Below, piece by piece: positions 544 to 43,906 of a stretch of DNA of 64,000 nt; position 1 is the first letter of the stretch; every line of letters begins with the position of its first letter. The stretch comes from Saccostrea cucullata (taxonomy: Eukaryota): contig NW_026935415.1 in assembly GCF_032062105.1 (NCBI RefSeq), positions 1 to 64,000 of the forward strand, written 5' to 3'. The notes beneath the pieces are model-generated. The model made no database searches. It saw nothing but the letters and a program-made list of their open reading frames with translations, and was not told the origin of the DNA. A program made the position numbers and the translations under genes.

Positions 544-941
544 GTACGTGTGCAGAGGCCATTGCCTTTCATGCCGATTTCAAACGTCATCTCAGGAATG
601 TTCCTGTAAACACCATTATTAAATTTGACAATGTCCAGTTGAACAAAGGCAAAGGATACGATCCAAAAACAGGGGTCTTTACAGCACCGGAGGATGGTCT
701 TTACTCTTTTGATTGGTTATCTATGTCTACGAGGGGTGCAAGTTTATACCTTTGCGTCGTTGTTGATCATGACTGCCGTGTGGGTACCTGCATTGATAAA
801 CAACAAAGTGGATCTACAACCGGACACTTTGTAACTGACCTGAAGAAAGGAAGCAGAGTATGGATCCGGGTTGCCTACCGCAATGCACAGTTAATTAATG
901 GTGCTTTGTACAATTACTTCTCTGGATTCAAAATCAATTAA
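544..941 (+). CDS. C1q-domain-containing protein, terminal exon (upstream exons not identified)
   Basis: Acceptor AG at 542-543. Frame reads TCAEAIAFHADFKRHLRNVPVNTIIKFDNVQLNKGKGYDPKTGVFTAPEDGLYSF...LKKGSRVWI...YNYFSGFKIN*, containing the gC1q motifs AF, F-x5-N-x-G-x2-YD-x2-TG-x-FTAP-x2-G-x-Y-x-F and FSGF. Confidence 0.92.
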
Positions 942-4534: not shown

Positions 4535-5276
4535 TTATCAATTGTATCGTGAAACAATCTCCTTCTGTAAAATTACAATTTGAATATGTATTTCAGCATT
4601 AGTTCATTTTTTGACAAAAGAAAAATGTTAAACGAAAATCACTTACGTTAAAAAATAGTCCAGTTGGCTGTGATTGCGACGTTTTTAATTATGTACGAAT
4701 GAAATAATTGTTTAAAATTTTTGTAAACAAAGATGATTTTAGTATGATTTAAAATACGTCTCTATAAAAGATGAATATATTGGGAAAAAAAAATGAATAA
4801 TGAATGCATAAGAATTTTATCATGCCTTTTGTCAGTCCATGATAGTTTTTTTATCACCTCTCGTACGTACAAATAAATTTTACTCAACAATTCATATTTC
4901 AATTGCCCCAGATATGCAAAAAAAAATCTTTAGAGACACAACTCTAGTATGATAGGACTTCACTTTTTATTTGAATTAGCAACACATCATGAGTAACGAA
5001 TTTTAGCAATCCTGAACTCTTTAATTTATATTTAAAAGATTGAAATTTTTGTTTTCAATATTTGCATTATTGAGGGATAGTTGTCTGTCTATTACCCCAG
5101 AGACACGGTGAAAATCCCAATTAATCAAGCAAAATCCGCAATTACTTCTGTAGCAAATCCGTATTAAGATGCATACACAGGATATAATATATCCGTGACA
5201 AACGTACGAAAGTGTTTGAAATACATTTAGTGCGGCAGAGTTAATTAGTCGTAGGCATAGCACACCAGTTTGAAAG

Positions 5277-5455
5277 ATGAATTGGAAACTGTTTACGTTG
5301 GTTTTCTGTGCTTTGTTATTTGAAACTGTAATTGGAGATTGTGACATGAGGTGTACCTGCAGAAATTCGACCATATGCTCTGGAACATTCGCTGATTGCT
5401 CGAAGCAATCATTAACAATGGTACCTTCTACTCATCCTAGCGACACATGTGTTTT
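5277..5455 (+). CDS. LRR gene exon 1: signal peptide + LRRNT cap
   Basis: MNWKLFTLVFCALLFETVIG (hydrophobic leader), then DCDMRCTC...ADCSKQSLTMVPSTHPSDTCVL (LRRNT C-x3-C-x-C...C-x4-L-x2-VP); phase-2 donor TT|GTAAG at 5456. Confidence 0.9.
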
Positions 5456-8400
5456 GTAAGTATTTAGGTATAAAGCATATCCCTAATTTGATGATTTTCA
5501 TCATGGTATAAATGCCTTTGTCCGCCTACTTTATTAATCATTATATTTTTACATTTAAACGTAATAATCCTTGAAGTTAGATATTGCAGCGATTTCATTA
5601 CTCTAAACTTTAATATCCAATAAATTGATTCTTTTAATGATAATCTAAAATTTCGAGACTGTAAGTTTTTTTTTAAAATATTCTTTGGACATCAATCCTC
5701 CAAAGTAATTATATTTCATTCATTCATTTTTAATGACTCTTTGCAGTTTATAAAGCGTAAACGTCCCGAACCCATTTTATACAGTGTACATTTTATGTAT
5801 TGACATTGTGAAGCTAAGAAAAATTATATACGTGATCATTGCATAATAATAAATTTTATTCTGACATTTGCTCCACGTTTTTTTCTAGACGTCTGAGCGA
5901 GAACATGATAACCAAAATTGAGAACACCACACTTAATGGTTTGACAAACTTAGGAACATTGTAAGTTTTTTTCCTGACAGTTTCTTACTACTAATATGCT
6001 TTGGAGTATTAATTTTAATTACAAACAGTATAATAGAAGTTACTCACTAGATTTATTTAAAATATATAAAGAGGATGTTTAATGAATCTATCAAGGATTG
6101 CATGGATGAGTTAATGTGAAATACGTAATTCATATTGACGGAGAAATAAGTTGAGCCTTAATATAATGAAATCCTTATTTTATCCATTATTCATTGACGC
6201 TTCGTAGATTATAAAGCGTAAAATGCCCAAACTAAGTTTATATTCCGCCTATTAAATAATCTTTAGTCTTAAAATATATATTTGATGAGGTTGTTTTTAA
6301 TGATATCCTCTTTGAATCCATTGTTCATCGATGCTTCGCATCTTATAAAGAGTAAACTGTCCAAACCCAGTTTATATTGTAGCTATTAAATTTAGTCTTA
6401 AAATAGACATTGATGGTATTGAGATCGAGGCTAGAAAGAATAATTTATGTAATAATTGTCTTTTTAATTTTTTTACTTTCTCCTTAAAAATGCATTCGAA
6501 AAAAAGATTCATTTTGAAAAAAAAATGATTTTGGCATTCATTTTTTTTACATTTCTTTTTCAGAGAGTTGTACGATAACAAGATAACCGAAATAGAAGAC
6601 AGTGCATTCATTGATTTGGCAAATTTGGGACTTTTGTAGGTTTTTTTCTAATAGTTTTAAACAACAGATATATTTCTTAGAGTATCAACCCACCAAAGTA
6701 TAATACACTTTGATTTGATAAAACAATTTCAAGAGCAATAGTATCGTCTCTTGAATTTTTATTCGTGAAGAATAAACAAAGTAACCTAAATTTCGACGTT
6801 AATTTTTCACAATTTATTTCCAGATTTTTGAACGGAAACAAAATAACCACCATAACGAAGAGCACATTTGTGGGTTTGTCAAATCTAACACTTTTGTAAG
6901 TCTTTTTCCTTATAGTTCCTAACTACAGATATGTTCAATCTAATTAAAATCAGACTTCCTAGATCCGCGCCGTATTCACTCTGCGCAGAGTGAATACGGC
7001 GAAAATCTAGGAAGTCTGATTTTAATAAGATTGCAGATATGTTTTGGAATATCAACCCGATAATGTAAAATAAACTCTGTTTTTATTCAACAATTTCAAG
7101 AATTATGGTCTCCTAGATTATTTTACATTCAAATTGAGCCCTTAACCTTAAAAATCTGAATGTTTATAACGAAGTGTATGATAGAAATATATGTAACTCA
7201 CTAGATTAATTTGTAATATGTGACTATTATGTACGACTTATATTGAATTAAAGGAATAAGTTAATGTGTAATTCAGATTCATGTACCGTGTTGATGGAGG
7301 AAGAATTTGAACGTTTATATACAGTTCAACAGGGTTATACCGAAGTCAATCGGACAAACTAAATTACTTCGCTCTATCGTTAATTCATTATATCTGTATA
7401 AGGAATTCGTTTAATTTATGTAGCTGGGTATTCAAAATAACTTCATTCTTTCCTTGAATTCGCAATATCCGTCTTCGTACTAAACGGGTTTTACTGTAAT
7501 AAGATTGATAATTCTTGGGGTTGGCATAGTGAGGCTAGATCTATGCCTTCTTATCAAAATTATTGTTTAAAGAAAAGGGTAAAGTTATCATGATTTTTTG
7601 GGTGATATATACTAGCACTTGTATAAGTGACCATTCTTAATTCACTCTTAACTTTTTTTCCTTTAAGGTATGTGTATGAAAACAGCATCTCCACAATAGA
7701 GGATAACGCGTTCAATGATTTGACAAAATTAGAGAAACTGTAAGTTCTTTATTCAAAATATTTTTGGGATGTAAATCCTCTAAACTCATGACACTTCGCA
7801 GTTTATAAAGCGTAAACAACCCAAACTCAGTTTTAACGTGTAAATTTCAAGTTGTTGCATTGTGAAGCTAGTTGGAATTATTCACTTGTTAATTGACTTT
7901 TAAAGGCATTTATTTTTTAAAATTGAAGAAACTATAATTATGCATGAAAATGCTCTTGCTCTTGGCTTTCACTTTTCTCATTTTTTCCAGATATCTGTAC
8001 GAGAACATGATATCCAAAATTGGGAATAACACACTCACTGGTTTGACGAACTTAACAGAACTGTAAGTTGCTCTTGATTAATTCCTAAGGTTTTGGAGTA
8101 TTAATCAACCAAAGTATTATATACTATGTTTTTATTCTATAATTTCAATAACGATAGCATCGTCTTTTGGATTTTTTTCTCAACTTTTTATATTGCTCTG
8201 AACCTTTAGAACAAAGTATGATAGAAGTAGCTTACTTGATTTATTTGAAATGTATATGTGACGAATATGTATATTGAAATACTAGTATTTAAAGATTAAA
8301 AGGATAAATACGGGACGAGTAATTCAGATTTACGGATAAAAATGAGGTTGTTTATGTTAATATAGATCTAGTAAATGAAAGGTGCCTACAAAAATATCAA

Positions 8401-11400: not shown

Positions 11401-14400
11401 CGCTGATCATTCGGTGGCCAATCACCCGCCCAAAATTGCTGAAGCCATCTATTAAGATGTCTCTTATTGCGATTCTTTATTCTCTAAGTCTGATAAAATA
11501 ATGTTATTTCGCTTGTGATGAATCCCATATTTTGAAGCAACAAATGCATTACCGGTACAACTCGTCGAACCGGTTTTTTTTTTCCATTTCGACAGTCCTT
11601 TTGTTAAATTCAACAGAGTAAAACAACAATGTTTATGATCACAAATACCAATGTTGTCATTTAATTTTCAATTAAATACTAGAAAATGACGAGAACTGTG
11701 TCTTTACAAAAAATTGGAAGATTAAGTGCTTTTTTAGAATCTTTTTAGAGTGTTTGTCTTTTTCATTCTGAAAAATATTACACTTTAAAACGTGACGTTC
11801 CGTTGTGACGCGGCGACACCCCCTATACTCTATGTTTTAAACATCTATAAATTAAATAAAATAAACATTATTAAATTAAAATTTCAAGGTTGATTTGATT
11901 TATATCTGTGCATCTTTTGGTATGTTCTTTTTGATAATATGACGCCAAATATAACAGATATGGACACTGTGACATTACTTTTGGATCAACCCTCATATTT
12001 AGGATAATGTAAATAAATTTTTGCTTCACTTTGGGACAGTCTAACTTGCCCACTCACCCTCTTCTTCAATATTTTTTTCTGTATAATCATGCATACAACA
12101 AATATTTGAAATATTTTACACTTTACTTATGGCGCATTGTCCATCTGCCATCAAAAAATCTTTTAAAGATATGTCTTGCATTTATACATATGCTATTTTT
12201 TTTAATTGAAAAAGTTTGAAAATATTACACTCCAACTATTTTTGCAGTCGCATTGAAATACTATGCATATAATTTTTTGTTGTCCTGTATCATCAAGCTA
12301 TTTACGTTGATATGGAAGTTTCCTGCTTACATCAATTCCCCATTTTCAAAAGTGAGTTATCTCCCCTCAAAATCGGAACTCTTCTACACTAGCATAACTT
12401 CCGCGGACTACGCATTACAATAATCCAACAAAATAGTGATCAACTTACACGCTGCATTTAAAAATTTTAAAAGAAAGAAACGGTTTGCAATTTTTTTTAG
12501 ATAATAAGCGATTGTATAAAGGGTCTGTTACCCACCCACCCCCTTTCTAGACAGCTATACGAATTAGCCAGGCACGTAGCATCGTCTTTAAAAGGGGGGG
12601 GTGGCAGCCAAAGAAATATTTTTTTCTTACCTAGAAAAGTAGACAAGCAAAGAAAAACCTTGCCCAAAGTCGAAAAAGCTACTTATTTCAGTACCAGTTC
12701 CTTGGCATACAATACTTATTTCCCCTTATATAACTTTACCGTAGTATAAACTGTGTGTGTGGCAAGGGGGGGTGGCAACATGTCTTTTAACGAACATTTT
12801 CAATAGAAAAAGTAATATTGGGGAAAAAGTGGGGGTGGGGCTAGGCCCCTTGACCCCCCCCCACCCCCCACCCCCACCCCCCCGTTGCTACTTGCCTGTT
12901 AGCTGGCAAACAACTTCATCAGAAATTTGCAATTTTAATGTACGTTATTGTAATTTTTTCTTAAAATCTTACATGTATAATCTACAGGATACATCTTATT
13001 TATGTTTTTAAAAAGATAATTTACAAAGTACACGTAAGTTTTTAATAAGCGGTGTGGTGAAACCGGGAAGATGAATTTCGCTGGATGTCAGTTGAGTGTG
13101 TTACACACTTGAACTCAGAACTGACCATTAGAATGTTTCAAATCAACTTTCATGCGAATTTGATTGACACTGAGGTGACGCACGAGGGTTTTGAGCGTAC
13201 AGGTACAGAGAACGAATTTGTAAATGGATTGGACAGTTGAATATGAACCAAAGTTGTGGAAATTAAAAATTATTAGAATAAAACTAAAAATTCTTATATT
13301 TGATCTGCACATTTTGTAAATAATGATGATCCGTATGCAGAACATCCACTACCGAAAATTAGCTTTTGTTTTGTATTTTTTTTTAAAATAGGCCTATTCG
13401 AATATGTATCAGCATTTTATCAGTAATTTGTTTCGTTTTTTTTTGTAAGGGGGGGGGGGGGGGCTTACACAGTGCCTTATTATAATTCTATACAGATTAA
13501 TACAAATCCAGAAAGAGACAATGAGTGGGCAATTTAAAAAAATACGAATCAGTTAAGATTTCTTTTTATTCACAAACACAATAACATTTTTCCATATGAC
13601 AGAGGCATTACACCATGAACATGTTTACATCAAGAACGTCCGCGGAAGTGACTTTATTTATAGCGCATGCGTATTAAACACAGTAAAAGAGTTCCTTTCA
13701 GGGGAAATAACTCACCTTTTGAAAATGGGGAATATTTTTCAATTCAGTATTTTTCTTAATTCGATTTATTTTTATCAACTGAATCCATCATACATAAAAG
13801 ATGCTTTTAATTACATTTATGGGAGAATACCATGATACAATACAAAACAAAATGAAAATAAGCAGTCAAACCAGATTGATATATGTTAATCAGACAATAA
13901 GTATGGACTTAGAAATAAGGTGAGGCTGTATATATTGAGATTAAATATACTGAGTACCTCTGGTAGCATTGTGAGGGTAGTAAAATTATTCACCTGATTT
14001 ACATGCACTTTACATTTACTCTTATTTTATAGGTATCTATACGACAACAGCATTCAGACAATAGAGGTCAATGCTTTCAGGGATTTGACAAATTTGTGGA
14101 ATTTGTGAGTTTATTATATTATATATATTTTGGATTACATGTATGTCAATTGTACAAAATTCAATATCACATCTATGGATTCATTCACGAAGTAAAAAAA
14201 ATTATAGAGACTATAAGTTCGTTAATTGAAATATATTTTGGAAAAATCAAACCTACTAAATGTAATTGATTCAATCACGAATTAAGGTAGGTCGCGGGTT
14301 TACTGAATAAAAATTCCTACGAGAAAACATATTTTGAAAATTCGATATACTAGTAGTGTTCCTAAGATTTAGTCCTATTTTTACGCTTTACTATTGAATT

Positions 14401-17400
14401 ATATAGAAAAATGACTTTTCAAGCTAATTTTGCGAAAAGAGTTTCTATAAAAAAAGCTTGGATAACTTTAAAAAGACCTAGACAAATTAGTCGATGATTT
14501 AAAAAAGTCAAGATGTGGTAAGACTTAAACTATTGAGATAAAAAAAAAACAATTTGTCTTATCGCTAGTTTCTTTTTCAAAAAAATTTCAGTTTGTTTTA
14601 CCATTGCCAAAATTGTGCATTTATGAATGACTAGAACGTCATAAATTGAACGTAATCTCGTTAACATTATACAGCGACAACGCCGCGAATGATAAATATT
14701 AAATTTTATGATGTTAATGTTTAATAAGATTTCAAGCATAACACATGAGTTTGACCACTTCATATATCTGAAAAAAGGGGGGGGGTCTATATAAGTGGCG
14801 CCAACTCTCGAACATTTGTTACTTTCTTTAGTAAAAATTCCATAAGCAAAATGTAAAACACTTGTACTTAGCTCTATACACAGATTGCTTTTGTTATATA
14901 AGGGAAAATGAACTTGTTACTCGTAAATTACATGTATCTGTTTACAGTGCCATAAGGTCTGGTAGTCCGGGTGTCTGTACATGTATACATTTTTAAAAAT
15001 GATTTCACAATATGATAGCCTGCTTATACATATAGCACCACATGAGATTCAAATACAAAATAAACAAAAAAAAAATAATAATTATGAGAAAAAGAAAAAA
15101 GAAAAAATAATAATAGAAAAAAAAACGTACTTAAATTTCACCCGTTTTAAGTAATGAGGATTGATCCAATCCTGTAAGTATTTTATATAAAATAATATTT
15201 TCGTCGCGGATTTGATTGGCCAATAAAGTTTAATATGCACGTTTCCTTTGGGTTGCAAATTATATGCGCACATAAGAACCTTCAAAATTTTGGCTTAGCA
15301 ATCAACGAAAACTTTCTTCTTGCATACTGTAACTTTTTCTTTTTGCATACCATAACTTTTACGTCAATTCATTTGAATTGACTTTAAACAGTTAAGTAAC
15401 ACTTACTATATAAATTATTCCTTTTATTTGGTACGTTTTTTTTTGTTCTAAGACATTGCACAAAAAAATCACAACGGAAGCATAAAGGCTTTCAGTTTGT
15501 ATCAATCTTTTAAAGAAAAAAAAATACCAGTAACTCTGCAATGTCTTTCGACAAAATTGCACTAGGTCTATAGTTTCAACTAGATGCTCGGTTCCGTAAG
15601 CCCTGACGAGCTCTCATGTGACGTCACAGTCTAGATGTCTCGTGCGACTTGGCGTTTGAAGTGGCGGATCAACGTTCCAGGTGTATATAGGAAGGTTCAA
15701 CTGCGCTCGCCCCAACGGTCACATCGTAAAACATAATTACCCTAGTTTAGTTCAAACATGCGCACGATGTTTACGTTAAATAGCATTTACTATGAATTAA
15801 TCCACTTGTTTCGTACAGACTATGTATAAAATTATATTCAGAGAATTAAATCAAAATTTAATTAAAATTAAAAGTGCACAAAACAACCGCTCGAATCATT
15901 GTAATTGTGTACTTTAAAAGTATTGCTTTCTTCATAAGGAATGAAGAAACTTTCATTCTGCGTAAAAAAAATTCAATAATTTTTCGCATTTTTTTTTTTT
16001 TTGCAGATTATTGTACCGAAACAACATAACTGCAATCAAAAACAACACATTCATTGGTTTGATGAACTTAAAGAAGTTGTAAGTTTTTTTCCCTAAGAAT
16101 TTCTGACAACAATATTAATTTTGAAAGTTTTAATCCACCAAAAAAAATGGTATGCTGTTCTCTGATTCAACAATTTTAAGTACAATAGCACCATGTCTCT
16201 TATAAGACATTTTAAGATTTTTTTTTACATACTCTAAAATCACATATTTTCGAAAAGTCAAGTTTTCGTGGTTTGAATAAAAACTCTTGGTTTGTGTGGA
16301 TTTGAATTTGTGGATGAAACAATTGTTGAGTAGTTATATAGGCAACATTTTACATTTCATGGTGGACATGAATTCGTGGGTTTCTTCATTACTCAAAAAC
16401 AACGAAAATTTAACCCCATGAAAATTTGTGATTTCACAGTACATATTAGCATTATTCTTTAACAACAAACAGTAGGTTCAAAATTACTCACTTAATGTGT
16501 AAAGCGTAATTCAGGTTGACGGAAAAATAAGTCGAGTTTGTATATTATAAGATTTGTGATGACATTGTGAGACTGGAAACAATTATTCACGTGATCCATT
16601 TTTTTTCTTTAAATAATTATGATTTTCTAGGACTGTGAGGTAAAACTATTAAGAATCATGACATACAGTAGCACTTGAATTTCACTCTGAACAATTTTCC
16701 CCAGGTATCTAGCCCGCAGCAGCATAACCACAATCGAGGCTGGCGCGTTCACTGATCTGTCAAAATTAGAGGAACTGTAAGTTTTTGGATAGAAGTTGAG
16801 GTTGCATAAAATCAGATTAAATCTAGCGAGGGTGGCCCTTGAGTTAAGGATAAGTTATAGTCTTTTTATTTGAATGTAGCTTTTCAAGATCGCACATACG
16901 TTAGTTATGTTTCCATGTCCTCGATGCTTTTCATTATTATAATTTTCTTAAAGAATTAGGTAAATTTATTATGATTTTTCTAGGATGACCTAAGTAAGAA
17001 CTTGAAATTCCTTCTTCATAATGTCTTTCAGGGATCTTTCCAGCAACACCATAACCACAATAGAGGATAAAGCGTTCAATGATCTTACAAAATTAAAGAA
17101 ATTGTAAGTTCTTTACTTAAAAATATGTTTGAAATGTCAATCCTCATAAACATACTTCCTTCAATAACAATACCTTGATTCATTCAACACTCAATAAGGG
17201 AGATTGTAATTTCAATTTTTAAATTGTTTTGGATAATATCAATTCTTTAAATTAAATTATCCCATGAATTGATATTTTCAATGATTTAAAAAATGCAACC
17301 ATTTTTTATATGCAAGTTTGTTTTTTTTTCAAAAATATCTTTGGAATATCAATCCTCTAAAAGGTTATATCCCATGTATTGATTTGACAAATTAATAGAG

Positions 17401-20400
17401 ACTGTTATTTTTAAAATAATGGGATATTAATCCTCGGAACTGTAGTATCCAATGCATTCATTCTGCATTGACGTTTTGCAATTTATAAAGAGTAGACTGT
17501 CACAAGCCAGTTTATACTCGTGTAAATTACATCTATTGGCATTGTAAAGCTTGTAGGAATTGTTCATTTGAAAACTTTTCACTGTATTTTTTATTAGGTA
17601 ATGAAAACTTTCAATTGCTTAAAAAAGAGGATTCTTTCAGTCATATTCTTAAGAACAGCACATTTGTTGGTTTGTCAAACTTAACGACATTGTAAGTTTT
17701 TTTTAAATAGTTCTTAACTACAGATATTTTTAGAGTATCATTATATCAAAGTATCAATACTGTATACGTATTAATTCAACAATTTCATCAACAATTGCAT
17801 TGTCTTGGGGATTTTTTTTTTACATGAATGTGGGTCCGAACCTTCCTAACCTTAATAGTTAGTGGAGCGAGAATAACAACAAACGTTCAACAAATTATAA
17901 AATTGCCTTGATTTAAGAGATATATTGCAGACAAATATTCAATAAACAATTCTTAATTGAATGAACAAACTCTGTCCTGGCATCGGGTTGATAATGCAAC
18001 ATATATCATGTGACGTCAGAGTCTAAACGCACCAAATGTCACCTGCAGTTCGACGAGTCCGATCTAAATCTAAAAAAAAAACAAAAAAACTGAATATGTA
18101 TCTGCGCTCACCCTAACAGTCGCACTATCAACATAATATAAAACAGTATGGTAGAAGTAACTTACCTGATTTTATTTGATGTTTTGTATAGCATAATGAA
18201 TTATTTAAGGATTCAAATAATACATTAATGTGGGATTCATACTGACAGAGAAATAAGTTGAGGTTGTAAAATTCAAATTTAATAAAGCAGGGATGACCCT
18301 TGAGAGCCTAGTCATGTTATTCACATCCTCGATGCTTTTTATAACTATAATTTTCTTAAAGAATGAGGTAAAGTTATTAAGATTTTTTAGATTGACATAA
18401 GCAATAACTTGTCATTCCCTCTTCACTATGTATTTCAGGGATCTTTCCAGCAACACCATAAGCACAATAGCGGACAATGCGTTCAATGACCTAACAAAAT
18501 TAGAGACATTGTGAGTTCTTAACTTAAACATATGTTTGAAATGTCTTCCTTATAACCTTTATTTATCCAATGCATTTATTCATCCAATGAATTGACAAAA
18601 TTAGAGAGATTTTAAGATCTTTAAATTTTTTTGATATATTGATCCACCAAACTGTGTAATCCGAAGTATTCAAATTTTGATTCTTTCCATGATTTGTAAA
18701 AAAAAAAAGAAGATGTAAGTTTGTTATTTATAAATATTTTAGGATATCAAATGAATAGTCTAAACTGTAATGCCTTATGCATTAATTCTTCATCGGAGTT
18801 CCGCAGTATAAAAAGCCTAAACGGCCCCTCCCCCCGGTGAACTCAGTTTATACCGTGTTAATTCTATGTACTGGTATGGTTTTACTTGTAGCAATTATTC
18901 AATTTATAATTGACTCTTTTAATGCATTTTTCATTAGAAATGAAAAATAATTTTGCGTGAAATAAATCTATGTGTGTCTTTTTTTCTACAATTTTTCCCA
19001 GATTGTTGGACAACAACAAAATAACCAGTATTACGAAAGGCGCATTTGTTGGTTTAACAAACCTAAAGGACTTGTAAGTTTTTTCTGATATTTTATTGCT
19101 ACAGACATTTTCTGGGGAATATAAGTTCAACAAATTATAAAATATTGTGTTTTGATTCAAAAATTTCAAGAAATATAGAATCGTCATTTTGTTGATTAAT
19201 GTTGACTCGAACCTTACTAACGGACAGCGTGATAGGAGTAACGTACTTGATTTATGAACAAAATATGGGACAAATATGTATATTGAATTATTTAAGGATT
19301 CAAATGATAAGTTAGTGTTGGATGCATAATTACGAATGAGGCAAAAATAAGATGAGATAGTATATTATAAGTTTAACATAACTGTGGTGGTTTTGTGAGG
19401 CTATTAAGAATTATCACGTAATATATGCTTTTTTTGCCCCTAGATCGAAAGATCCCGAAGGTATATTATTTTTGTCCTGTCTGTCTTTTTTTATTCTGTC
19501 TGTTTTCAACTTTAACCCAATCCATAACTATTGAGTAGGCGGGGCTATGACGTTCATATTTCACAGTTATATTTCTTGTGAAATGAACTTTCTTTAGGTA
19601 CCACCAAATTTGACTTCTTGACCTTTGAGTATAACCTACTTTTAACAAATATATACCACACTTTAAATTTGGCCATAACATTTTGAGCAGTAAGAGCCAA
19701 ATCCTTCAGCTGGAATACTTTTGACCATTTCACCTTGACCCACCTTTTATAAACTTTAACCTTGGTCATAACATTTGAACATTGTCAATAAGAACTAGGG
19801 CTTTAATATATCATAGGTGTATTCAAAAACTTATCTTTGGATATCAACATTTTTTGCTTTTCACATTGAACTTTGACGTTTGACATGCTTTCTGGAGAAT
19901 TAAAACCTTGCAGGAAGCTGCCAAAAGGGTATCATTAATGTTCACAAACAAATATGTTTATAATGGTAATTTTCTAAAGAGATAGTGTAAAATTAAAATA
20001 CCCACACTTTCTAAAGAAAGTTCGGGTATATTGTTGTTACTCGTGTCCGTCCGTCCGTCTGTCGCACTTTTTCCCTGAACTCCTCCTACACTTTACTCAG
20101 TAGGCTAATCATCTTTTGGGAGATGGTTGGTGGTGCTATTAAGATGTGCAGTAAGGTTTCGGAATGTTTGATTTTGCCCCGGGGTCAAATGGGAGTGTGA
20201 ATTTAAAGGCCTTAGTGTGGGTATTACAGTCTCATGACAGCATCCATTTATGATTGTTTGAGGGCGTGGTATATTTCTACCTAATTGATATTTACTCTTT
20301 ACATTTTTTCAGGATGGTTCTCAACAACAGCATTACGACAATAGAGGCTGGCGCATTCAATGATTTGAATAAATTAGAGATACTGTAAGTTAATTATTCA

Positions 20401-23400
20401 AAGAATTTGAATGTCTATCCTCATAACAATAATCTGAACAATGCATTAATTCATTTAATGAGAGAGACTGAAAGCTCGTTATTTTAAATATATATTGGCA
20501 TTGGGAAGCTTGTAGGAATCATTCACGTGATAATTGACATAGAACCGAATCTTCTTTTTAAAGAATGATGAAATATTTATTTTGCAATGACGCAAACTCA
20601 CTCTCTACATCTACTCTTTACATATTTTTTCCCAGAGATTTGAATGAGAACAAGTCTTTTTTTCTACATTTTTCCCCAGATTTTTGGACAACAACAAAAT
20701 AACCAGTATTAGGAAAGGCGCATTTGTTGGTTTGACAAACGCTAAGGACTTGTAAGTTTTTTCTGATGTTTTATAGCTACCATTGACGTTTGACATGCAT
20801 TTGGGGGAAATCAGCCCTCGTAGTAAGCGAGTTTTTGAGGGTGTGATATATATGTACTTAATTGATATTAACTCTTTACAATTTTTTTCAGGATAGTTAA
20901 CAAAAACAGCATTACGACAATAGAGGCTGGCGCATTCAATAATATGACTAAATTAGAGCAACTGTACGTTGTTTATTTAAAAAAAATTGGCATTTCTATC
21001 CTCATAACAATAATTTGAACAATGCATATCTTCATTTAACGATTAAAAAAAAGTCTTGTCCTTGACTCTCACTCTTTACAATTTTTTCCCAGATATTTGA
21101 ATGAGAACGAGATTACAACGATACAGGACAACGCATTTGTTGGTTTGACAGGCTTAAAAGAACTGTACGTTTTTTTCTAATAGTTCCTTACTACAGATAT
21201 TTCTGGAATATCAGTCTAATTTTGATGTACTGTGCTTCGATTCAATAATTTCAAGAACGATAACATCTTCTTTTTGATTTTTGTACATCAATGTTAGCCG
21301 GTAATTAAATCGCAAACAGCTTGATAGAAGTAACCCATTTGATAAATTTGATGTACATTGTAATATCTAAGATAGGTTGCGGATTTACTGCGTAAAAAAT
21401 ATAAAGCATGTTCTTAAAATTTGACTTCATGTTCCTGAGTATTTACAGCAAAGCAAGATAAACATAAAAAGATTGGGATGAAAAAAAAATCAAAATATCC
21501 TTTTTGAGTTTTCTTGCTACATGTGTATAATTTCAAAGTTTGCTTTTATATTGTCAAACGTTCAAGGCGTTTTTAATGAGTACATCGTCATGTACAATGT
21601 CATCGGGTTTACATGTATATATTCATGTTTGAAATATGCAGGATGAAAAGCTGACATAGGCTCACTCTGTAATATTATTAATCACTTATATATTGCAGAA
21701 TTGTGCTTGTATGTTTGCTGTATGTTGTTAAACGTCCCTTTCGATATTTTTGCTCTCATTTGGAGTCGATGTCACTTGCCATCGACGCTTATAATGTCCT
21801 ATACTCGGCACTTACAGCGATTGAGCATTGAGGGATCTTTTTACTGTTCGTATTTACTGTGTTACCGGACCTCGGTTTATACGGTATCATTCTAAGAATC
21901 AGTCTCCACGTCACACAGTGAGATTCGAACCTGCAACGTAACGATTACCACCTTGCGAATATTTGATACCAATTATTTTACATGTAGTCTCTAGGAAAAC
22001 GATAAAATAAAGTGTGCTTAAGAGGGCTGGGGGCTCGCGGCCATTTTTAGACTTTATTGATCTCTTTTAGAAGAAGAGCTCTATACAAATATGGTCAGAT
22101 TTTAAAACTAAAATTTGAATTTTTTTTCCTTTGCCAAATGATTGTTGAAAACTTAACTTCAAAAAAATGATTTACATGAATATAGGTATTAGGATCCTTT
22201 TCACAATACATGTAATTCAAAACTGAATGATGATCATACTTTATCTCTAGAGTCATGTGATTTAGTTATAGTTGTGAAGAACGTGGAAATCAGTTTAAAG
22301 ACAGATCATACAAACAAATACATTGATTCCTCTAATGATTTGGCAGAATGAGAGAGACTGTTAGCTCATTATTAAAAATATTTTTTGATATCAATCATCT
22401 AAAGTAAAATATTCTATTTTTGAATCATTCTATGACGCTCCGCAGTTTTAACTTTCCCATCCTTGTTTATACAGAATAATCCCATATATTGGCATTGGAA
22501 AGCTAGTAGCTAGGAATTATTCACGTGATAATTGACAAAGAACCGTATTCTCTTTTTAAAGAATGAAAAAAAAATAATTTTTGAGGGACAAAAAATCTAT
22601 TTAGACATTTACTCTGTACACATTTTTTTTTCAGACATTTGAATGAGAACAAGATTACAGCAATACAGGACAACACATTTGCTGGTTTGACAGGCTTAAT
22701 GGGGTTGTAAGTTTTTTTCTAATAGTTCCTTACTACAGATATTTACCAATCCAATGTTGATGTACTGTATTTCTATTCAATAATTTTAATAACGATAGCA
22801 TCTTCTTTTGGATTTTTGTATATCACTGTTGCCCTGAAATCAAATTGCAAACAGCTTAATACAAGTAACCCATTTGATAAATTTGAAATACCGTATATAC
22901 TCGCCTATAAGTCGGTTTTTTGGGAGTTAATCTCTGGTCTAAAACTCTTTGTCCGACTTAAAGGCGAGCAAATAAAAGTATGGTTTAATATGAGGTCAGC
23001 CCATCTCATATACAAGCTTATTAAATACGACCGACTTATATGCAGACCGACTTATAGGCGAGTATATAAGGTAGGTAACGAGGATGAACATTAAAATATT
23101 TAAGATGGAGTGCGTATTTTCTGCTTTAATACAGTATAATCTCAAATATTGGCATTGTGGAGCTTCTAAGAATTATTCACATGATAATTATCAAAGAAAC
23201 GTATTTTCTTTTTAAAGAATTAAAAAATATTTATTTTGCTGAAACAAAAACTCGCTCTCTACATTTACTCTTTACACATTTTTTTTTCAGATATTTGAAT
23301 GGTAACAAGATTACAGCAATACAGAACAATACACTTGCTGGTTTGACAGGCTTGAGGACATTGTAAGTTCTTTCTAAAAGTTTCTAACTACAGTTGTATT

Positions 23401-26400
23401 TGAAGCACCAAAGTATGATATAGATATACTGTGTTTCGATTCAATAATTTCAATAACGATAACATCTTCTTGTGGATTTTTACTCCTCATTGTTGGCCCG
23501 AACTTTAATGACAAACAGCTTGATAGAAGTTTGATTTATTTGAAATAGGTGACGAGTATGCACATTTAAATATTGAAGATAGGTTGTGGTTTAAGAACCC
23601 TCTCTACACTGCACACTAAAGAGTTCTGATTCTTATGTATTTTTCTGCAGTTAGAGTGATCTGCCCTTAGATCTAAATTTAAAAAAAAAATTTACAGTAC
23701 AATACTCAATTTGTAATTAATTCAGCAAATCTTAACATTTTAAAAGGCCAAGAGAAATTAACTGAACATGTTATTTACATGTACTTTCTTAATTGAAGTA
23801 ATTAACATTGATTTCTAGTCACTGATACTGGGTTGTCTTTGAGCTTTTTTCCCGGAGGCAAATGCCACGCATCATATAGTGAAAATTAGATAAATACGCA
23901 AAATATTAACTCCTTTATACAATATATTTTTCTCAATGTCCAAAAAGAATATTTACACTTGTGTAGAGAGGGTCCTTAACTGCATAGAAAATCTGAAGCA
24001 TATTATGAAAATTTGACTTCATGTTCCTTAGTATTTACAGCATATCATAATTTTTGTCAAGTTTGCATACGTTGTATTAATGTTATGTTACCGTAAACGC
24101 AGCATAGCTTTGGGTATAACTTTCAACCGGTGTTTGCTTGCCACATTTTGGTTTTTGTATATACTAGCTTGAAATATATCAAGTCTTAATAAACAACAAT
24201 TTCAACATATACATGTGTTTTAAGTTATAGTATTCTAGGTTACTGTTCATTTAATTTTTGCTGGAAAGAGGAAGCATAAATATCATTTATGACAGTAAAT
24301 AATTTTATTGACGAATGATTTAATATAGCAAGTTGTGTTCATTTTGTGTTATGTTCAACATATATATTGTTTATGTAGTAAATTAGCTGTAACTGTAAAC
24401 CTTATAAGAGCCTATGCAATTTTTCCCCACTGGGAGCCTCAGGTTCAATGCTGCAATCTGATTGGTCGAGAGTTAGCGTCGCTTTATACAGTTTGTAAGA
24501 CAGTAGACATTTTTGTGAGGAGGCTGAGAAAAATTTTTAAACCCTCCCACCTCTCCCATTTTTATACAAAAGAAATTGAGCCATGAGCCTTTGGACCTCA
24601 CCTTCTGCCACTTACAATGATTTTTCTAGTCATGTATGTTTGCATACAAGTATTTTGGAATATTGTAATTTTGATGTATTATACCACTTATTGTGTTTGC
24701 AATGGTTATAGTTACAAAACTTCTAATATACAGGTTTTAAGTCTAGACTTGTACATTTTGCTAATGCCTGTAAATTGTAATTGCTCAACCGGTGTTTGCT
24801 TGCCACATTTTGGTTTTTGTATATACTAGCTTGAAATATATCAAGTCTTAATAAACAACAATTTCAACATATACATGTGTTTTAAGTTATAGTATTCTAG
24901 GTTACTGTTCATTTAATTTTTGCTGGAAAGAGGAAGCATAAAACTCCTTTATACAATATATTTTTCTCAATGTCCAAAAAGAATATTTACACTTGTGTAG
25001 AGAGGGTTTAACGGCATAAAAATTCTAAGGCATATTCTGAAAATTTGACTTCATGTTCGTTAGTATTTACAGCATATCATATGTACTGTAATTTTGTCAA
25101 GTTTGCATACGTTGTATTAATGTTATGTTACTGTGTAAACGCAGCATAGTTTTGGGTATAACTTTTACGCTTTACTTTTGAAATAAATGGGTAAATAGCG
25201 CTTTAAAACCAATTTCACCGAAAGAGTCTCTTTAAAAAAAAGTTTTCACAATACATGTTATTCAAATTGGACGTTTATCATACTTTATTTCTACATTCAT
25301 GTAAATAAATTATAGCGGTGAAGAACGGGGAAATAAGTTTAAGGACAATTTTTTCTTCGGAGGAGACCTTAATATCAGTTCACAGGTTTAGAAAGTGGAT
25401 GTTTCTTGGAATTTTCTCTCCTTGGAAAATGAAATAGACTTGGCAAATATTAGTTAATACTTCGATAAAATAACTATTATACACTCAACCAATCATCAAC
25501 AAAATAACAAATATGGATAAACTACACTCAGTAAAGGTTTACAGATGAAAACAGATTTCAGGGATTATTATGTTAGCTTGGTGCTAAAAATTAAATATAA
25601 AATTAAGAAAAATATACCAAGCCAGGTAAATTTTATGAAGAAAAACAAAATGAAAAGTTTTCTAAAGTTTATATTACACATTAAACACCAAGCTAACATA
25701 TTCTAAAATTTGTTTTTCATCTGTAAACGTCTACTGAGTGCGATTTGTCCATATTTGTAATTTATTTAAGGAATGTTTTTTTACGTTGTGTGTGAATTAT
25801 TGGTGTCTGAACCACACAGACTTATCACGTAGGCATATTGGCGCGCTTCATGAGAAATATGCTTTCTTGCATGTCTCTGTGATTCACACACAAATAATTC
25901 ACACAAAACTTTAGAAAAAAATCTTATATATACATTTTACACCTAAATATACTCAATATTTGAGTTTTTCTCTGGCCTATATCGTTGCATTTTTACTAAC
26001 ATTGTTGTTGCCTCATTGTGACGTCACGTTAGCGCTAGTTTCTCTGTGTATATTTCTTTGTGCGAGTATACACAAAAATGAAATTCAAATCAATTTCACT
26101 GTTGGCTTAGTTGAAAAGCACAGCGAATATAAATATTAATGTATAGGCTAATATTTTCCAAGTCTATTTCATTTTCCAAGTTCCAAGAAGAAATTATAAG
26201 AATTATAAAAAAAATGTTTGTATCATCATAATCATCTGTCTTTAAACGTCCATTCTTTAATTTTTATTTCAGGTATCTGAACAACAACAATATAGTACAA
26301 TTGGAAGCAACACTGTAAATAGTTGGACATCTTTATATAAATTGTAAGTAATTGAGAATAGAATAACGCATAAAAATATTTTAAAGAATACGAGGAAACA

Positions 26401-29400
26401 CTTTATAATGTAGGGAAAAAATCTCATCATTTACTTGATCATTTTTTAGAATATATCCTTGATAATTTAAGAATAAATGCATTTCCTACTGTTAACGTTA
26501 ATACGTGCTTTCTTATTTCATTACTTTTCTTTAATCTTGTATGATATTATTTACATAAAAATTTTAAGTAACAAGTTTGTTGAACTATGATCCTTTAGAA
26601 AATTAAAAGAGCATTTAAATAGCTTTTGATAGCTATGTGTTTATCATGATCAGTGTTAATAAATTGATTTGATGAAAAACAACAAAATAAAGAAACAATC
26701 ATTATACTTTTATCTTAAAGCTCATTTGAGAATTGAGAGACATGAAATGTCATGTTTTTAATTTTTAAAGAAAAAAAATTATGAAAAAAATATATACCTG
26801 TACGAGGGCTGTTCAATAGATAAAGTACCCGGTGCTCGAAAAGAAGCAAAAGACGCTTTAAACTGATTTAGTCTTCATGGTTTAACTTCTTAATCTCTTT
26901 TAATTAAAACAAATGTCTGTAACATTTTTATCCAATTTCTGATTGTCTTAGAACTCATTTTTGGGCATGCCCCTTAGTATACTGGGAAATGCCAGATCCA
27001 ATTATTTCCTGGACTTGTTTCTTACCTCTGAAAAGTGTTGTTTTTTAATTTTGGAAATAGAAACAAGTCAAAAGGTCAAAGATATGGCGAATATTGTTAA
27101 CGTGAAAAAATATTAACTTTCTGTTTCTGATTTTCCCGAAAACCTCTTTACTCTTCAGGGCGTGTGGGTTGTGGCTGTCATGAGGAAATTAAATGTAGTG
27201 GATTCCTGATTCTGGATCCTTCCTCTAAAATTTTTTTCTTTTTTTTTGCCAAAAATTTGCTTTCTAGACTCCTCCAAAAAATGTCTCCCTGAATTCGAGT
27301 TTGAACATCCATACCACTAATTGAATATCAATCTGTCTTTGTGCTCTTGCAATTCTTTGTTCTTGTCAGACCTTCGCTTTTTTAGGTCACCTGAGTTACT
27401 CAGGTGACCTATTGCTATCCGTTTTAGTCCGTTGTCGTGCGTCGTGTGTTGTGTGTCGTGCGGCGTGTGTTAACATTTGAACATTTTCAGCTTCTTTTCT
27501 GAAACCGCTGTACCAATTTCAACCAATTTTGGAACAAAGCATTTATGGGTAATGGGGAACACAAATCATGAATTTCATGGTCCCCGCCCCCCTGGGGCCT
27601 GAGGGGTGGGGCCAAACCACAAAAATTAGTGCAATCTTTAAAAATTTTCTTCTATACTACTGGACATCAAGCAGGCAAACTGTTGGCATGAATATAATGA
27701 GCATTGAGTCCTCTACAAAAATTGTGAAATTCATGGCCCGAAGGTCAGGGGTTCTAGTGCTAGGGTAGGGCTCTATTGATCATATAGTGAAAATGTATGA
27801 TTTCTTTGAAAATCTTTTTTCTCTGCTCCTAGGTATTAAATAAACTAACCAAGCACATAGTTATGAGTGCCTCTTCCAAAAGTTTGAATTTTATGACCCC
27901 AGGGTCAGAGGTTCTGGTGTTAGGGTGGGGCTCGACTGGTTATATAGTGAAAATGCATTTATTCTTTGAAAATATTCTTCTCTACTTCTATATTAAATAA
28001 ACTAACTAAGTACATAGTTATAATGAGCACCTCTTTCAAAATTGTGAATTTTTTGGCCCCAGGTTTAGGTGTTCTGGTGTTAGGTTGGGGCCCTATTGAA
28101 TATATGGTGAAAATGCATTAATTCTTTGAAAATCTTTTCTGCTCCTGGGTATAAAATAAACTAGTCAAGCACATAGTTATGTTGATGAAGAGTGCCTCTT
28201 CCAAAGTTTTGAATTTTATGGCCCCAGGGTCAGGGTTCTGGTGTTAGGGTGGGGCTGTATTGATCATATAGTGAAAATGCGCTAATTCTTTAAAAATCTC
28301 TGCTCCTGAGTATTAAATAAACTTAGTACATACTTATTATGAGTAAGAGTGCCTCTTCCCAAATTGTGAATTTTATGGCCCAAGGGTCATGGGTTCTGGT
28401 GTTAGGACGGGGCTCTTCTGATTATGTAGTGAAAATACATTAATTCTTTGAAAATCTTTCCTTTGCTCCTGGGTATTTTGCCCATGATCCAAGTATATAT
28501 ATTTATAATGAAGAAAGGTGCATCTAGCAAAACGGTTATTTTTTATGCCCCCTCCCTGGGTTGAGGTGAATGGGGGGGGGCTACAAAGTCTGAAAATAAA
28601 TTAATGCTTTGAAATCTGCTCTTTGGTATTAATCAACAATTTTATGATAAAATTTGCAAAATTTTGAAATATATGGCCCCAGGATAAATGGTTCCTTTGG
28701 GATGAGGTACACAACTGGTTATAAAGTGGAAGTGCATTTTCTATTAATGTTACTCTGATCTACTTATGGGTATTAAGTAAACAGAGTAAGCATGCTAAAT
28801 CTATAATTATGATAAACAATGGTGCCTCTTTCAAAATTGTGAATTGCGAATTTCATGGCCTCTGGTTTAAACAAATTTAATTGTTTGAAAGTTGTTGCGC
28901 TTTTGGAGTTTAAAAAGAGAAATAACAAATTTTCCATCTGTACTCAGGTGACCTATAAGGCCCGTGGGCCTCTTGTTATCAAATACATCCTATGATAAAT
29001 TTTATTTTGAGGATTTTAAGCAATAGATTCAAGTTCCATTATCTGTTTTGAATATCAAGCAAACATGGATACATGTAACTATAATTACTGATATTTTAAA
29101 ATAATTGTTAAGATCAATCAATCTTATATGCTGTCGTTTTCACTCATTTTTCAAAATATAGGGTGACCTTTGAGTATTGAGTTTTTACTGTCAAACTTTT
29201 CATAAAAACAGTGTAAACTACTCCCAAAATGATGTCTATCAAATTTGCTATGTGTCTTAAAGTCAATTATACATCAAATATTATTTGTTGAAATTTGGCA
29301 AACAGTACATAAGTTGTCATAATATTTGTTGGCAAGGACGGTACATGTAACCATTTTTGATGCCCATTATATATTTTTTTGTCATTGAAATCCACCTGGT

Positions 29401-29932
29401 CAATTGTCAATAAAACAGGCATTGGTTGCTGTAAATGTTACATATTCCAGTGAATATTTCTTTGGGATTTTTTTTACAAGTTTTACAGCAGCTTTAATGA
29501 AGCTTTTATTTTCACTTTAGTTTACTGATTCTTTACCATACATTATAATGCAGTGTCTTGAATAACCCTTGTTTTTCATCTTCTCATTTTGAAACTATGT
29601 GATGAACAGTGGTCACATAAACTGTTTTAAATTCATTAAAGATTCAATAATGAGAGAAAGTCAAATCTTAATGCCATATGATATCTGTTTTTTATGTCAT
29701 ACAGTTCAGGACATTATCTATTGAACAGCCCTCGTATATCGCACTTTTGGGTCTTACATTTATGACAATTTCAATTAATTTGTTTGTGGAAAGTTTTATA
29801 TAAAAAAAAGAAATTGTATTTTTGAATTCCGATACATATTTTCATTATTTTTATCAAGGCGAATACATGATAACCCTTTACATTGCGATTGCGAGTTGCT
29901 GAGCCTAGTCGATTTCATCAAATCTGGACGTA

Positions 29933-29973
<41 letters not shown>

Positions 29974-30193
29974 AAAACTTTCAACCAAACACATTTGTTC
30001 ATTTCTCGAAGAACAGAAAACACAATGCTCTACTCCTGCAAAATTAACTGGAACTCAACTGGCCAGTCTGTCAGCTTCAGCCCTGGGATGTCCCGAAAAG
30101 GAAACCAATAGTTCACCTTTAGGAGGAGGAAACATATTAGTTGTTACACTCTTGTCTTTATGTTTGCTTGTTAAAACCATCGTTGAGTTTTAG
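5277..30193 (+). CDS. Multi-exon extracellular LRR protein: signal peptide, LRRNT, 19-21 x 24-aa LRR, LRRCT, stalk, probable GPI signal; this allele has two frameshifting lesions near the 3' end
   Basis: Exon 1 is 5277-5455. Intact 72-nt AG..GT phase-2 LRR exons: 5889-5960, 6564-6635, 6824-6895, 7668-7739, 7991-8062, 8966-9037, 9893-9964, 14033-14104, 16007-16078, 16705-16776, 17032-17103, 18439-18510, 19002-19073, 20313-20384, 20680-20751, 20892-20963, 21093-21164, 22635-22706, 23291-23362. Each translates to xLxxNxIxxIxxxxFxxLxxLxxL (e.g. YLYDNSIQTIEVNAFRDLTNLWNL). Also a 51-nt exon (17641-17691), a 71-nt frameshifted exon (26273-26343) and the LRRCT exon from 29859. Confidence 0.9.
6936..7033. 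mobile_element. 98-bp foldback MITE with 10-bp TSD (Mutator-like)
   Basis: Near-perfect palindrome centred on CACTCTGC|GCAGAGTG; exact TSD CAGATATGTT at 6926-6935 and 7034-7043. Confidence 0.8.
7322..7497. mobile_element. Degraded TA-flanked MITE (Tc1/mariner-like)
   Basis: TACAGT...ACTGTA ends with imperfect inverted repeats. Confidence 0.4.
10909..11995. mobile_element. Non-autonomous mariner-like element
   Basis: 28-bp TIR CGAGGGTTGATCCAAAAGTAATGTCACA / TGTGACATTACTTTTGGATCAACCCTCA with TA on both sides. Confidence 0.85.
16230..16441. mobile_element. Degraded TA-flanked MITE
   Basis: Imperfect TIRs TACTCTAAAATCACA / TGTGATTTCACAGTA; internal TTTCGTGG subrepeats. Confidence 0.45.
17641..17691 (+). 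CDS. Shortened 51-nt, frame-preserving LRR exon
   Basis: TTCTTTCAG acceptor; encodes HILKNSTFVGLSNLTTL; TT|GTAAG donor. Only the 3' part matches the other LRR exons. Confidence 0.5.
19430..20247 (+). mobile_element. Two adjacent Helentron/HINE-like non-autonomous elements
   Basis: 5' subterminal palindromes followed by (GTCY)n microsatellites and TGACCTT motifs. The 3' end GTGTGGGTATTACAGTCTCATGACAGCATC has an inverse copy at ~63888-63920. Confidence 0.55.
21715..21950 (-). mobile_element. tRNA-derived SINE (degraded)
   Basis: Reverse B-box GATTCGAACC at ~21922; body similar to 33740-33920 and 53380-53670. Confidence 0.6.
23595..23975. mobile_element. TTAA-flanked MITE (Kolobok-like)
   Basis: TTAA-GAACCCTCTCTACAC ... 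GTGTAGAGAGGGTCC-TTAA. Confidence 0.7.
23908..25165. repeat. Nested local direct duplication X-Y-Z-Y'-X'
   Basis: Y 24123-24280 matches Y' 24785-24942 (identical by eye); X 23908-24123 resembles X' 24942-25165 (diverged). Confidence 0.8.
25421..26180. mobile_element. TIR element containing a foldback (~25508-25758) and a decayed 160-bp Crypton-type hairpin element (25767-26145)
   Basis: TIR CTTGGAAAATGAAATAGACTTGG(C)AAATATTAG with its inverse at 26148-26180; imperfect palindrome TAAGGAAT...TCTTA at 25767-25926. Confidence 0.6.
26273..26343 (+). pseudogene. Frameshifted (71-nt) last LRR exon
   Basis: Good acceptor and donor but 1 nt short. Reads YLNNNNIVQLEATL* (TAA 26316-26318); restoring one A gives YLNNNNISTIGSNTVNSWTSLYKL. 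Confidence 0.75.
26803..29734. mobile_element. Decayed mariner-like element carrying a nested HINE
   Basis: TA-CGAGGGCTGTTCAATAGATAA ... TTATCTATTGAACAGCCCTCG-TA. Confidence 0.85.
27382..28977 (+). mobile_element. Helentron-associated non-autonomous element (HINE) with ~160-bp satellite-like tandem array
   Basis: 5' palindrome AGGTCACCTGAG-TTA-CTCAGGTGACCT, (GTCGT/GTGT)n microsatellite, roughly 8 units starting AAATTGTGAATTT(C/T)ATGGCCCC, and 3' CAGGTGACC plus hairpin AGGCCC-GT-GGGCCT-CTTGTT. Confidence 0.85.
29859..30193 (+). CDS. LRR gene terminal exon: LRRCT + stalk + hydrophobic C-terminus, interrupted by a ~64-nt repeat-derived insertion
   Basis: Phase-2 acceptor AG at 29857-29858. Reads RIHDNPLHCDCELLSLVDFIKSGRI [29935-29998] SFLEEQKTQCSTPAKLTGTQLASLSASALGCPEKETNSSPLGGGNILVVTLLSLCLLVKTIVEF* (TAG 30191-30193), matching the LRRCT pattern NP-x2-CDC...C-x2-P-x2-L-x-G-x2-L...C. 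Confidence 0.85.
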
Positions 30194-43886: not shown

Positions 43887-43906
43887 ATATTTTCTGCAGT
43901 AAGTAT

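What the first reader, a model, noticed from the sequence alone, without database searches (positions are those of the whole stretch)
5277..30193. VLR-like LRR receptor built from ~20 interchangeable one-repeat exon cassettes
Seen: 19 intact exons of exactly 72 nt, all phase 2 at both ends and each one 24-aa LRR, between an SP-LRRNT exon and an LRRCT-stalk-hydrophobic-tail exon with no cytoplasmic domain. Established: SP-LRRNT-(24-aa LRR)n-LRRCT-stalk-GPI is the plan of lamprey/hagfish VLRs; one-LRR-per-exon phase-2 structure also occurs in ordinary genes such as glycoprotein-hormone/LGR receptors, so exon size alone is not new. Inference: any subset of these exons can be skipped, duplicated or lost in frame, and the splice junction falls inside the concave beta-strand (LxxL|xLxxN), so each new junction makes a new binding strand. 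The locus could be a combinatorial (splicing and/or copy-number) recognition receptor of an invertebrate. It lies in a window with two other innate-recognition genes (C1q-domain, F-type lectin).
Basis: partly seen in the sequence, partly recalled or inferred. Interest (0 to 1): 0.85.

Follow-up and report, generated by a model that had tools for sequence, protein, structure and literature searches.

The report
Oyster modular LRR surface receptor family
This rock-oyster gene encodes a probably lipid-anchored cell-surface protein with 20 binding repeats, each in its own exon; it belongs to a family of about 100 copies whose members gain and lose repeats in the germ line, which may widen what oysters can recognise, but this copy is damaged and no shuffling at RNA or cell level was seen.

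Summary
Observation essentially right: signal-peptide/LRRNT exon, 19 intact 72-nt phase-2 LRR exons, and a last exon with LRRCT, stalk and GPI-like tail. Every junction makes the Leu in the middle of a concave strand. The genome is Saccostrea cucullata. It holds about 100 related first exons (haplotigs included); copies examined have about 4 to 20 LRR exons, and Ostrea edulis homologues share the exon plan. Arrays grow by germline duplication of one- and two-exon blocks and lose single exons. Buried residues are conserved; concave ones change about as fast as silent sites (omega not significantly above 1). It is not a VLR: repeats are spliceable exons inside the gene, with no donor pool. No exon reads or splice joints in three RNA runs of a related species; exon skipping rests on RefSeq isoforms of one O. 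edulis homologue. The one-LRR-per-exon principle is known (brown-algal ROCOs, Slit, NLRs); this oyster family was not found described. The scan had not noted it on other DNA.

The parts
5277..5455 (+). Exon 1: ATG, signal peptide, LRRNT (four Cys), ends in phase 2
   Evidence: 92-99 paralogous exons in the genome
5889..9964 (+). LRR exons 1-7 (starts 5889, 6564, 6824, 7668, 7991, 8966, 9893; 72 nt each)
   Evidence: one-to-one with paralogue C6432; covered by contigs of a related species
14033..17103 (+). LRR exons 8-11 (starts 14033, 16007, 16705, 17032; 72 nt each)
17641..17691 (+). Broken LRR exon, 5' part lost (51 nt between AG and GT); the matching exon of paralogue C6432 has lost its 3' part instead
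18439..23362 (+). LRR exons 12-19 (starts 18439, 19002, 20313, 20680, 20892, 21093, 22635, 23291); 13/15 and 14/16 from a two-exon duplication, 17-19 from single-exon duplications
20636..20654 (+). 5' stub of an exon-17-type exon joined to an exon-13-type acceptor region: duplication breakpoint inside an exon
23321..23323 (+). Point in exon 19 where the allelic contig C4170 carries about 7.06 kb of extra DNA (3-nt overlap)
26273..26343 (+). LRR exon 20, 71 nt in the window (frameshift if included), 72-nt type on C4170
29859..30193 (+). Last exon: last LRR strand, LRRCT, short stalk, GPI-like signal, stop; 271 nt and open on C4170
   Evidence: Pfam LRRCT E 0.006, below cut-off
29939..30002 (+). 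64-nt insertion of a high-copy repeat fragment; frameshift unless spliced out by weak cryptic sites (29944-30016 or 29930-30011 would be in frame)
30101..30190 (+). GPI-like signal: small residues 26-28 aa from the end, short spacer, hydrophobic tail, no cytoplasmic domain
   Evidence: rule-based; no GPI predictor available

Best explanation
A germline-encoded, LRR-only cell-surface recognition protein of oysters (signal peptide, LRRNT, n 24-aa LRRs, LRRCT, stalk, probable GPI anchor), one of a family of about 100 copies in the Saccostrea cucullata assembly. Because each repeat is a 72-nt phase-2 exon that starts and ends in the same Leu codon, DNA-level duplication or loss of exon blocks keeps the frame and the fold and creates new concave strands. 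Diversity arises mainly by birth and death of genes and of single exons in the germ line (shown), helped by fast change of concave residues (shown as omega about 1). Occasional exon skipping probably adds isoforms and lets damaged exons be bypassed (inferred). The protein most likely binds microbial or other variable ligands on its concave face and, having no cytoplasmic part, acts as a capture or co-receptor like CD14 or the amphioxus VLR-like protein (inferred from analogy, not tested). The window's allele is probably defective or loses its anchor.
For: Family size: 92 and 99 first-exon matches, 31 tail matches, 215 exon-end matches against 6 controls, tandem copies on several contigs. Exon number differs: 20 here, about 15-16 in C6432/C2852, 9 in C15633, 5 in two C18125 genes, 4-5 in O. 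edulis. Duplicated exon blocks share flanking introns at 78-92%; the tree pairs 13/15, 14/16, 18/19 and groups all five exons of one O. edulis gene together. Dead exons in most paralogues examined. Purifying selection on buried positions (pN 0.024 vs pS 0.172, p 1e-10) and faster concave than convex change (pN 0.185 vs 0.104, p 0.0015) in 20 sister pairs. Tail motif fixed while the last-exon frame varies from 91 to 381 aa. Best structural match of a paralogue model: amphioxus VLR-like Bf66946, which binds bacteria on its concave face (PMC4731796). Scallop LRR-only proteins bind PAMPs (PMC5877582).
Against: No immune evidence for this family itself: no expression in three RNA runs, no ligand, no induction data. 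Concave omega is not significantly above 1 (best 1-1.5; 2 x delta lnL about 2), so relaxation explains it as well as positive selection. Copy counts include haplotigs. GPI anchoring was judged by rule, not by a predictor or experiment. C1q and lectin neighbours are weak support because such genes are numerous in oysters (own knowledge).
Confidence: 0.55

Rival explanations
1. Combinatorial splicing is the main diversifier: each gene gives many isoforms by skipping subsets of LRR exons (Dscam-like or ROCO-like repertoire).
For: All exons are frame- and junction-compatible. RefSeq isoforms X3 and X4 of an O. edulis homologue skip LRR exon 4 and exon 3. Both alleles carry single-exon lesions that skipping would bypass. 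LRR exon skipping is documented in brown-algal ROCOs (PMC11378527) and NLRP3 (PMC6642158).
Against: No splice joint at all in the RNA laid. All 21 donors are strong consensus sites with no sign of mutually exclusive arrangement. The two skipped O. edulis exons are 69/72 identical, so short-read mis-mapping could create those isoforms. Three other O. edulis genes showed no LRR-skipping isoform among the proteins seen.
Confidence: 0.15
2. Non-immune recognition or adhesion protein (gamete recognition, allorecognition, neural or mantle adhesion), like Nogo receptor or Drosophila connectin/chaoptin.
For: Same plan as GPI-anchored neural LRR proteins; Slitrk1, Nogo receptor, LGI1 and Slit rank beside VLRs. 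Absent from three RNA runs of unknown tissue, which fits restricted expression. Oyster sperm bindin diversifies by exon-level repeat variation (own knowledge, not checked).
Against: Neural LRR adhesion genes are usually few and conserved (own knowledge); here about 100 copies, lineage-specific, with many dead exons.
Confidence: 0.2
3. This particular locus is a recently decaying copy (pseudogene) of the family; its long array is partly neutral accumulation.
For: Window allele: frameshifting insertion in the last exon and a 71-nt exon 20; other allele: 7-kb insert in exon 19; two exon fragments; no RNA seen.
Against: 19 exons stay open with canonical sites; buried codons under strong purifying selection also in recent duplicates (pN 0.048 vs pS 0.15); the C4170 allele could make an anchored protein by skipping exon 19; the 71-nt exon may be a consensus error. 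Compatible with the best explanation at family level.
Confidence: 0.3
4. True VLR analogue with somatic assembly or gene conversion among LRR cassettes.
For: Domain plan and 24-aa repeat resemble VLRs; a large pool of related exons exists in the genome.
Against: The germline gene is complete; repeats are spliceable exons in the gene; no cassette outside the gene in the 64-kb window; exon order conserved between paralogues and in a related species.
Confidence: 0.02

Closest known systems
Lamprey/hagfish variable lymphocyte receptors (VLRA-F)
   Same: SP-LRRNT-24-aa LRRs-LRRCT-Thr-rich stalk-GPI-like tail; variable residues on the concave face; similar fold.
   Different: VLR germline genes are incomplete and filled somatically from flanking donor cassettes (PMC11160967); here the gene is complete, repeats are exons, and diversity sits in about 100 germline paralogues.
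Amphioxus VLR-like protein Bf66946 and invertebrate LRR-only PRRs (scallop CfLRRop, shrimp LvCD14L, sea cucumber Aj-VLRA)
   Same: Germline LRR-only extracellular proteins; Bf66946 is the top structural match of a paralogue model; PAMP binding reported (PMC4731796, PMC5877582, PMC10178686).
   Different: Those reports describe single proteins with few repeats; none read here describes a large GPI-type family with 4-20 one-repeat exons. Orthology not tested.
Brown-algal LRR-ROCO genes
   Same: Each LRR a single 72-nt phase-2 exon, exon duplication/shuffling, gene birth and death, alternative splicing (PMC3341825, PMC11378527).
   Different: Intracellular LRR-ROC-COR GTPases of stramenopiles; significant positive selection reported there; the oyster proteins are extracellular with no signalling domain.
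Slit, LGR/glycoprotein-hormone receptors, NLRs (exon-modular LRR genes)
   Same: One or two LRRs per exon, border at a fixed place in the beta-sheet, some exon skipping (PMC6642158; PMC11378527).
   Different: Few-copy genes with further domains and stable repeat number; RefSeq's 'slit homolog-like' names for this family reflect only LRR similarity.
Nogo receptor (RTN4R)
   Same: SP-LRRNT-LRRs-LRRCT-stalk-GPI plan; high-ranking structural match.
   Different: Conserved vertebrate neural receptor, not an expanded variable family (own knowledge).

Membership tests
Agnathan VLR | SP-LRRNT-24-aa LRRs-LRRCT-stalk-hydrophobic tail | tested here: met
Agnathan VLR | Incomplete germline gene with a non-coding intervening sequence in place of the LRRs | tested here: not met
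   exon 1 plus 19 LRR exons form an open frame
Agnathan VLR | Donor LRR cassettes flanking the gene | tested here: not met
   no LRR exon outside 5889-26343 on either strand of the window; only 5 kb upstream available
Agnathan VLR | Somatic assembly by gene-conversion-like process, clonal expression | not testable with these tools
   needs somatic versus gamete long reads and single-cell data
Invertebrate LRR-only / VLR-like pattern-recognition proteins | Only LRR modules with caps, no signalling domain | tested here: met
   stop follows the hydrophobic tail
Invertebrate LRR-only / VLR-like pattern-recognition proteins | Expression in immune tissue, induction, PAMP binding | tested here: inconclusive
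   no exon reads in three RNA runs of a related species, tissue unknown; binding not testable
GPI-anchored proteins | Signal peptide plus small omega-site residues, spacer and C-terminal hydrophobic tail without cytoplasmic segment | tested here: met
   rule-based on 11 tail loci; in the window allele the tail is out of frame unless the insertion is spliced out
Exon-modular LRR genes (ROCO type) | Each LRR a 72-nt symmetric phase-2 exon | tested here: met
Exon-modular LRR genes (ROCO type) | Alternative splicing of LRR exons | tested here: inconclusive
   no joints; RefSeq isoforms of an O. edulis homologue differ by one LRR exon but exons are near-identical
Exon-modular LRR genes (ROCO type) | Positive selection on concave residues | tested here: inconclusive
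   concave faster than convex (p 0.0015) but not above synonymous rate
Exon-modular LRR genes (ROCO type) | ROC-COR domain | tested here: not met
   gene ends after LRRCT-stalk-tail
Toll-like receptors / LGRs | Transmembrane helix followed by TIR, or 7TM domain | tested here: not met
   stop codon directly after the tail in all tails examined; no such ORF downstream

The most novel reading that the evidence does not exclude
Oysters have a VLR-shaped, GPI-anchored receptor repertoire that is diversified combinatorially by regulated skipping of one-repeat exons across about 100 germline genes, each new junction building a new concave binding strand, with different haemocytes expressing different isoforms.
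Probability: 0.13. Interest if true: 0.85.

Novelty: new variant of a known kind. Interest (0 to 1): 0.5.

Why it matters
Molluscan immune diversity is usually credited to FREPs, C1q, lectins and TLRs. A family of about 100 VLR-shaped surface proteins whose repeat number changes exon by exon would be a further, overlooked receptor repertoire in farmed oysters; RefSeq hides it under names such as 'slit homolog-like', 'biglycan-like' and 'opticin-like', often as partial models. It gives a direct test of whether an invertebrate reaches VLR-like diversity by germline exon turnover or by splicing, a question raised for brown-algal ROCOs and still open in animals. The exon principle itself is known, and function is untested.

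Tried and rejected
A small intron in the last exon as the native structure: rejected, because the allelic contig and all paralogues have one open exon. Additional 3' exons duplicated into C4170 as the 7-kb insert: no match to the array was listed for that stretch, so a transposon is more likely, but its letters were not read. Positive selection: not shown (a first IQ-TREE run failed on thread number). Single-sequence folding of the paralogue was poor (pLDDT 47); the alignment-based model (80) was used. Searches for homologues beyond Saccostrea and Ostrea by the first exon found none; these searches are limited by length windows and shared words, so absence in Crassostrea or mussels is not shown. 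Paper searches found no description of this family; subscription journals, where most oyster LRR papers appear, are not covered.
Full report
Observation. A profile scan of the window finds 19 intact 72-nt exons on the + strand, starting at 5889, 6564, 6824, 7668, 7991, 8966, 9893, 14033, 16007, 16705, 17032, 18439, 19002, 20313, 20680, 20892, 21093, 22635 and 23291, all AG..GT and phase 2. With exon 1 (5277-5455; signal peptide and LRRNT) they form an open frame of 515 codons, each exon adding one 24-aa typical LRR. No such exon occurs on the - strand or in 50 shuffles. Every exon ends in YT and begins with A or G, so any junction encodes Leu. In an AlphaFold model of a RefSeq paralogue (mean pLDDT 80) this Leu (58, 82, 106, 130) lies within each concave strand.

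What was missed. A 20th LRR exon lies at 26273-26343; it is 71 nt here, while contig C4170 has the missing base, so it is a consensus slip or an allele. The last exon starts at 29859 and is not open: relative to C4170, which is 94-99% identical over the 3' part of the gene and is taken as the other haplotype, the window has 64 extra bases at about 29939-30002, part of a repeat with 3,216 exact copies. Unspliced, the frame ends after half of LRRCT and loses the tail; two weak cryptic introns could restore the frame. C4170 has an intact last exon but about 7.06 kb inserted in exon 19. Exon fragments lie at 17641-17691 and 20636-20654. So both alleles seen are damaged, the C4170 one in a way that skipping one exon would bypass.

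Organism and family. Proteins matching exon 1 are RefSeq Saccostrea cucullata models on contigs with the lengths of C22750 and C18125, and Ostrea edulis proteins. Exon 1 finds 92 places in the genome and a second subfamily query 99; the tail finds 31; an exon-end pattern finds 215 against 6 controls and detects 11 of the 19 window exons. These counts include haplotigs. Paralogues read have 9 (C15633), 5 and 5 (C18125, tandem) and about 15-16 LRR exons (C6432/C2852). Last exons keep LRRCT and the same tail, with small residues 26-28 aa from the end and a hydrophobic end, while a Thr-rich stalk varies (91 to 381 aa frames). Four O. edulis genes have the same 72-nt phase-2 exons, 4-5 each.

How the array evolves. 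Exons 1-9 pair one to one with paralogue C6432 (56-70 of 72 bases), in order, and contigs of a related species cover exons 1-7, so order is stable rather than freely shuffled. The 3' part grew by tandem duplication with flanking intron: 13/15 and 14/16 (a two-exon block), 11/12, and 17-19. Two repeat types largely alternate, which suggests a two-exon unit. A breakpoint inside an exon (20636) shows DNA-level rearrangement. Single exons die often: the exon after 11 is broken at different ends in the window and in C6432, and stops, deletions or lost splice sites occur in C11769, C15633, C17250, C18125 and C23665. Exons of one O. edulis gene cluster together, so arrays are rebuilt gene by gene.

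Selection. Over 20 sister-exon pairs, pN is 0.024 at buried positions, 0.104 at convex and 0.185 at concave positions, against pS 0.172 (concave vs convex p 0.0015; concave vs pS p 0.75). A codon model gives concave omega 1-1.5, not significantly above 1. The scaffold is conserved and the binding face is free or mildly diversifying. The scan's note s1-725385 on the same stretch is thus confirmed only in its weaker form.

Expression and splicing. About 1.6-1.9 billion letters from each of three oligo-dT runs of a related species (tissue not given) were laid on 4600-10100: depth 0 on exon 1, near 0 on LRR exons, no splice joints; reads fell on intronic repeats. This does not show silence in other tissues or in this species. 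RefSeq isoforms X3 and X4 of an O. edulis homologue each skip one LRR exon, but those two exons are 69/72 identical, so mis-mapping is possible.

Mechanism. Shown: a complete germline gene, frame-neutral exon modules, gain and loss of genes and exons, a conserved GPI-like tail and a fast-changing concave face. Inferred: GPI anchoring, ligand capture on the concave face, signalling through a partner, an immune role. The last rests on family dynamics and on analogues: amphioxus Bf66946, the top structural match, binds peptidoglycan through concave residues (PMC4731796), and scallop LRR-only proteins bind PAMPs (PMC5877582). A gamete- or adhesion-recognition role remains possible.

Comparison. 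It looks like a mature VLR but fails membership: VLR germline genes are incomplete and are filled from flanking cassettes (PMC11160967). Sequence and fold matches do not single out VLRs over LRIG1, LRRC15, Slit, Slitrk or Nogo receptor. The one-LRR-per-72-nt phase-2 exon design with shuffling and splicing is described for brown-algal ROCOs and noted for gonadotropin receptors (PMC3341825, PMC11378527); a fixed exon border in the beta-sheet and LRR exon skipping are described for NLRs and Slit (PMC6642158). No paper in the searchable library described this oyster family. Verdict: a new variant of a known kind, interest 0.5; the more exciting splicing-repertoire reading is open but unsupported so far (0.13).

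Limits. One read-laying run was available, so the lesions at the 3' end were not checked against reads.

Noticed in passing
window 38616-45082: Tyrosine-recombinase retrotransposon (Ngaro/DIRS-like): identical 264-nt direct repeats at 38616-38879 and 44819-45082, ORFs for SGNH hydrolase, gag-like protein, RT-RNase H and recombinase, apparently intact and young.
   Followed up: partly
window 43909-44291: Five copies of a 22-nt motif at 70-77 nt spacing (first gap 144) just downstream of the recombinase ORF, inside the element; function unexplained.
   Followed up: no
window 543-941 (+): Last exon of a C1q-domain gene, Pfam C1q E 4e-21.
   Followed up: partly
window 55308-61229 (-): F-type lectin (F5/8 type C) exons with a signal-peptide-like start, with a DUF3504/recombinase (Crypton-like) ORF at 58282-59214 between them.
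   Followed up: partly
window 47990-49845 (+) and 51280-52026 (-): Cytochrome P450 exons, followed by a LINE reverse-transcriptase fragment.
   Followed up: no
G000 C20263 (match table): A third copy about 89% identical to the window's 3' array, with its own arrangement of exon-17-type repeats; not read.
   Followed up: no
G000 C18125:117001-177000: Three tandem family genes with identical exons shared within and between genes and long mucin-like stalks (open frames of 136, 388 and 662 aa); RefSeq model XP_062582676 uses only three of five LRR exons.
   Followed up: partly
L044 (O. edulis, XP_056007377): A family member in which LRRCT is followed by further exons with an Ig-like-looking segment, so the family includes other C-terminal plans than GPI; Pfam did not call the Ig domain.
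   Followed up: no
window 27380-28900: High-copy oyster repeat with internal ~160-nt tandem units in the last intron; the 64-nt exon insertion resembles the same class of element.
   Followed up: no
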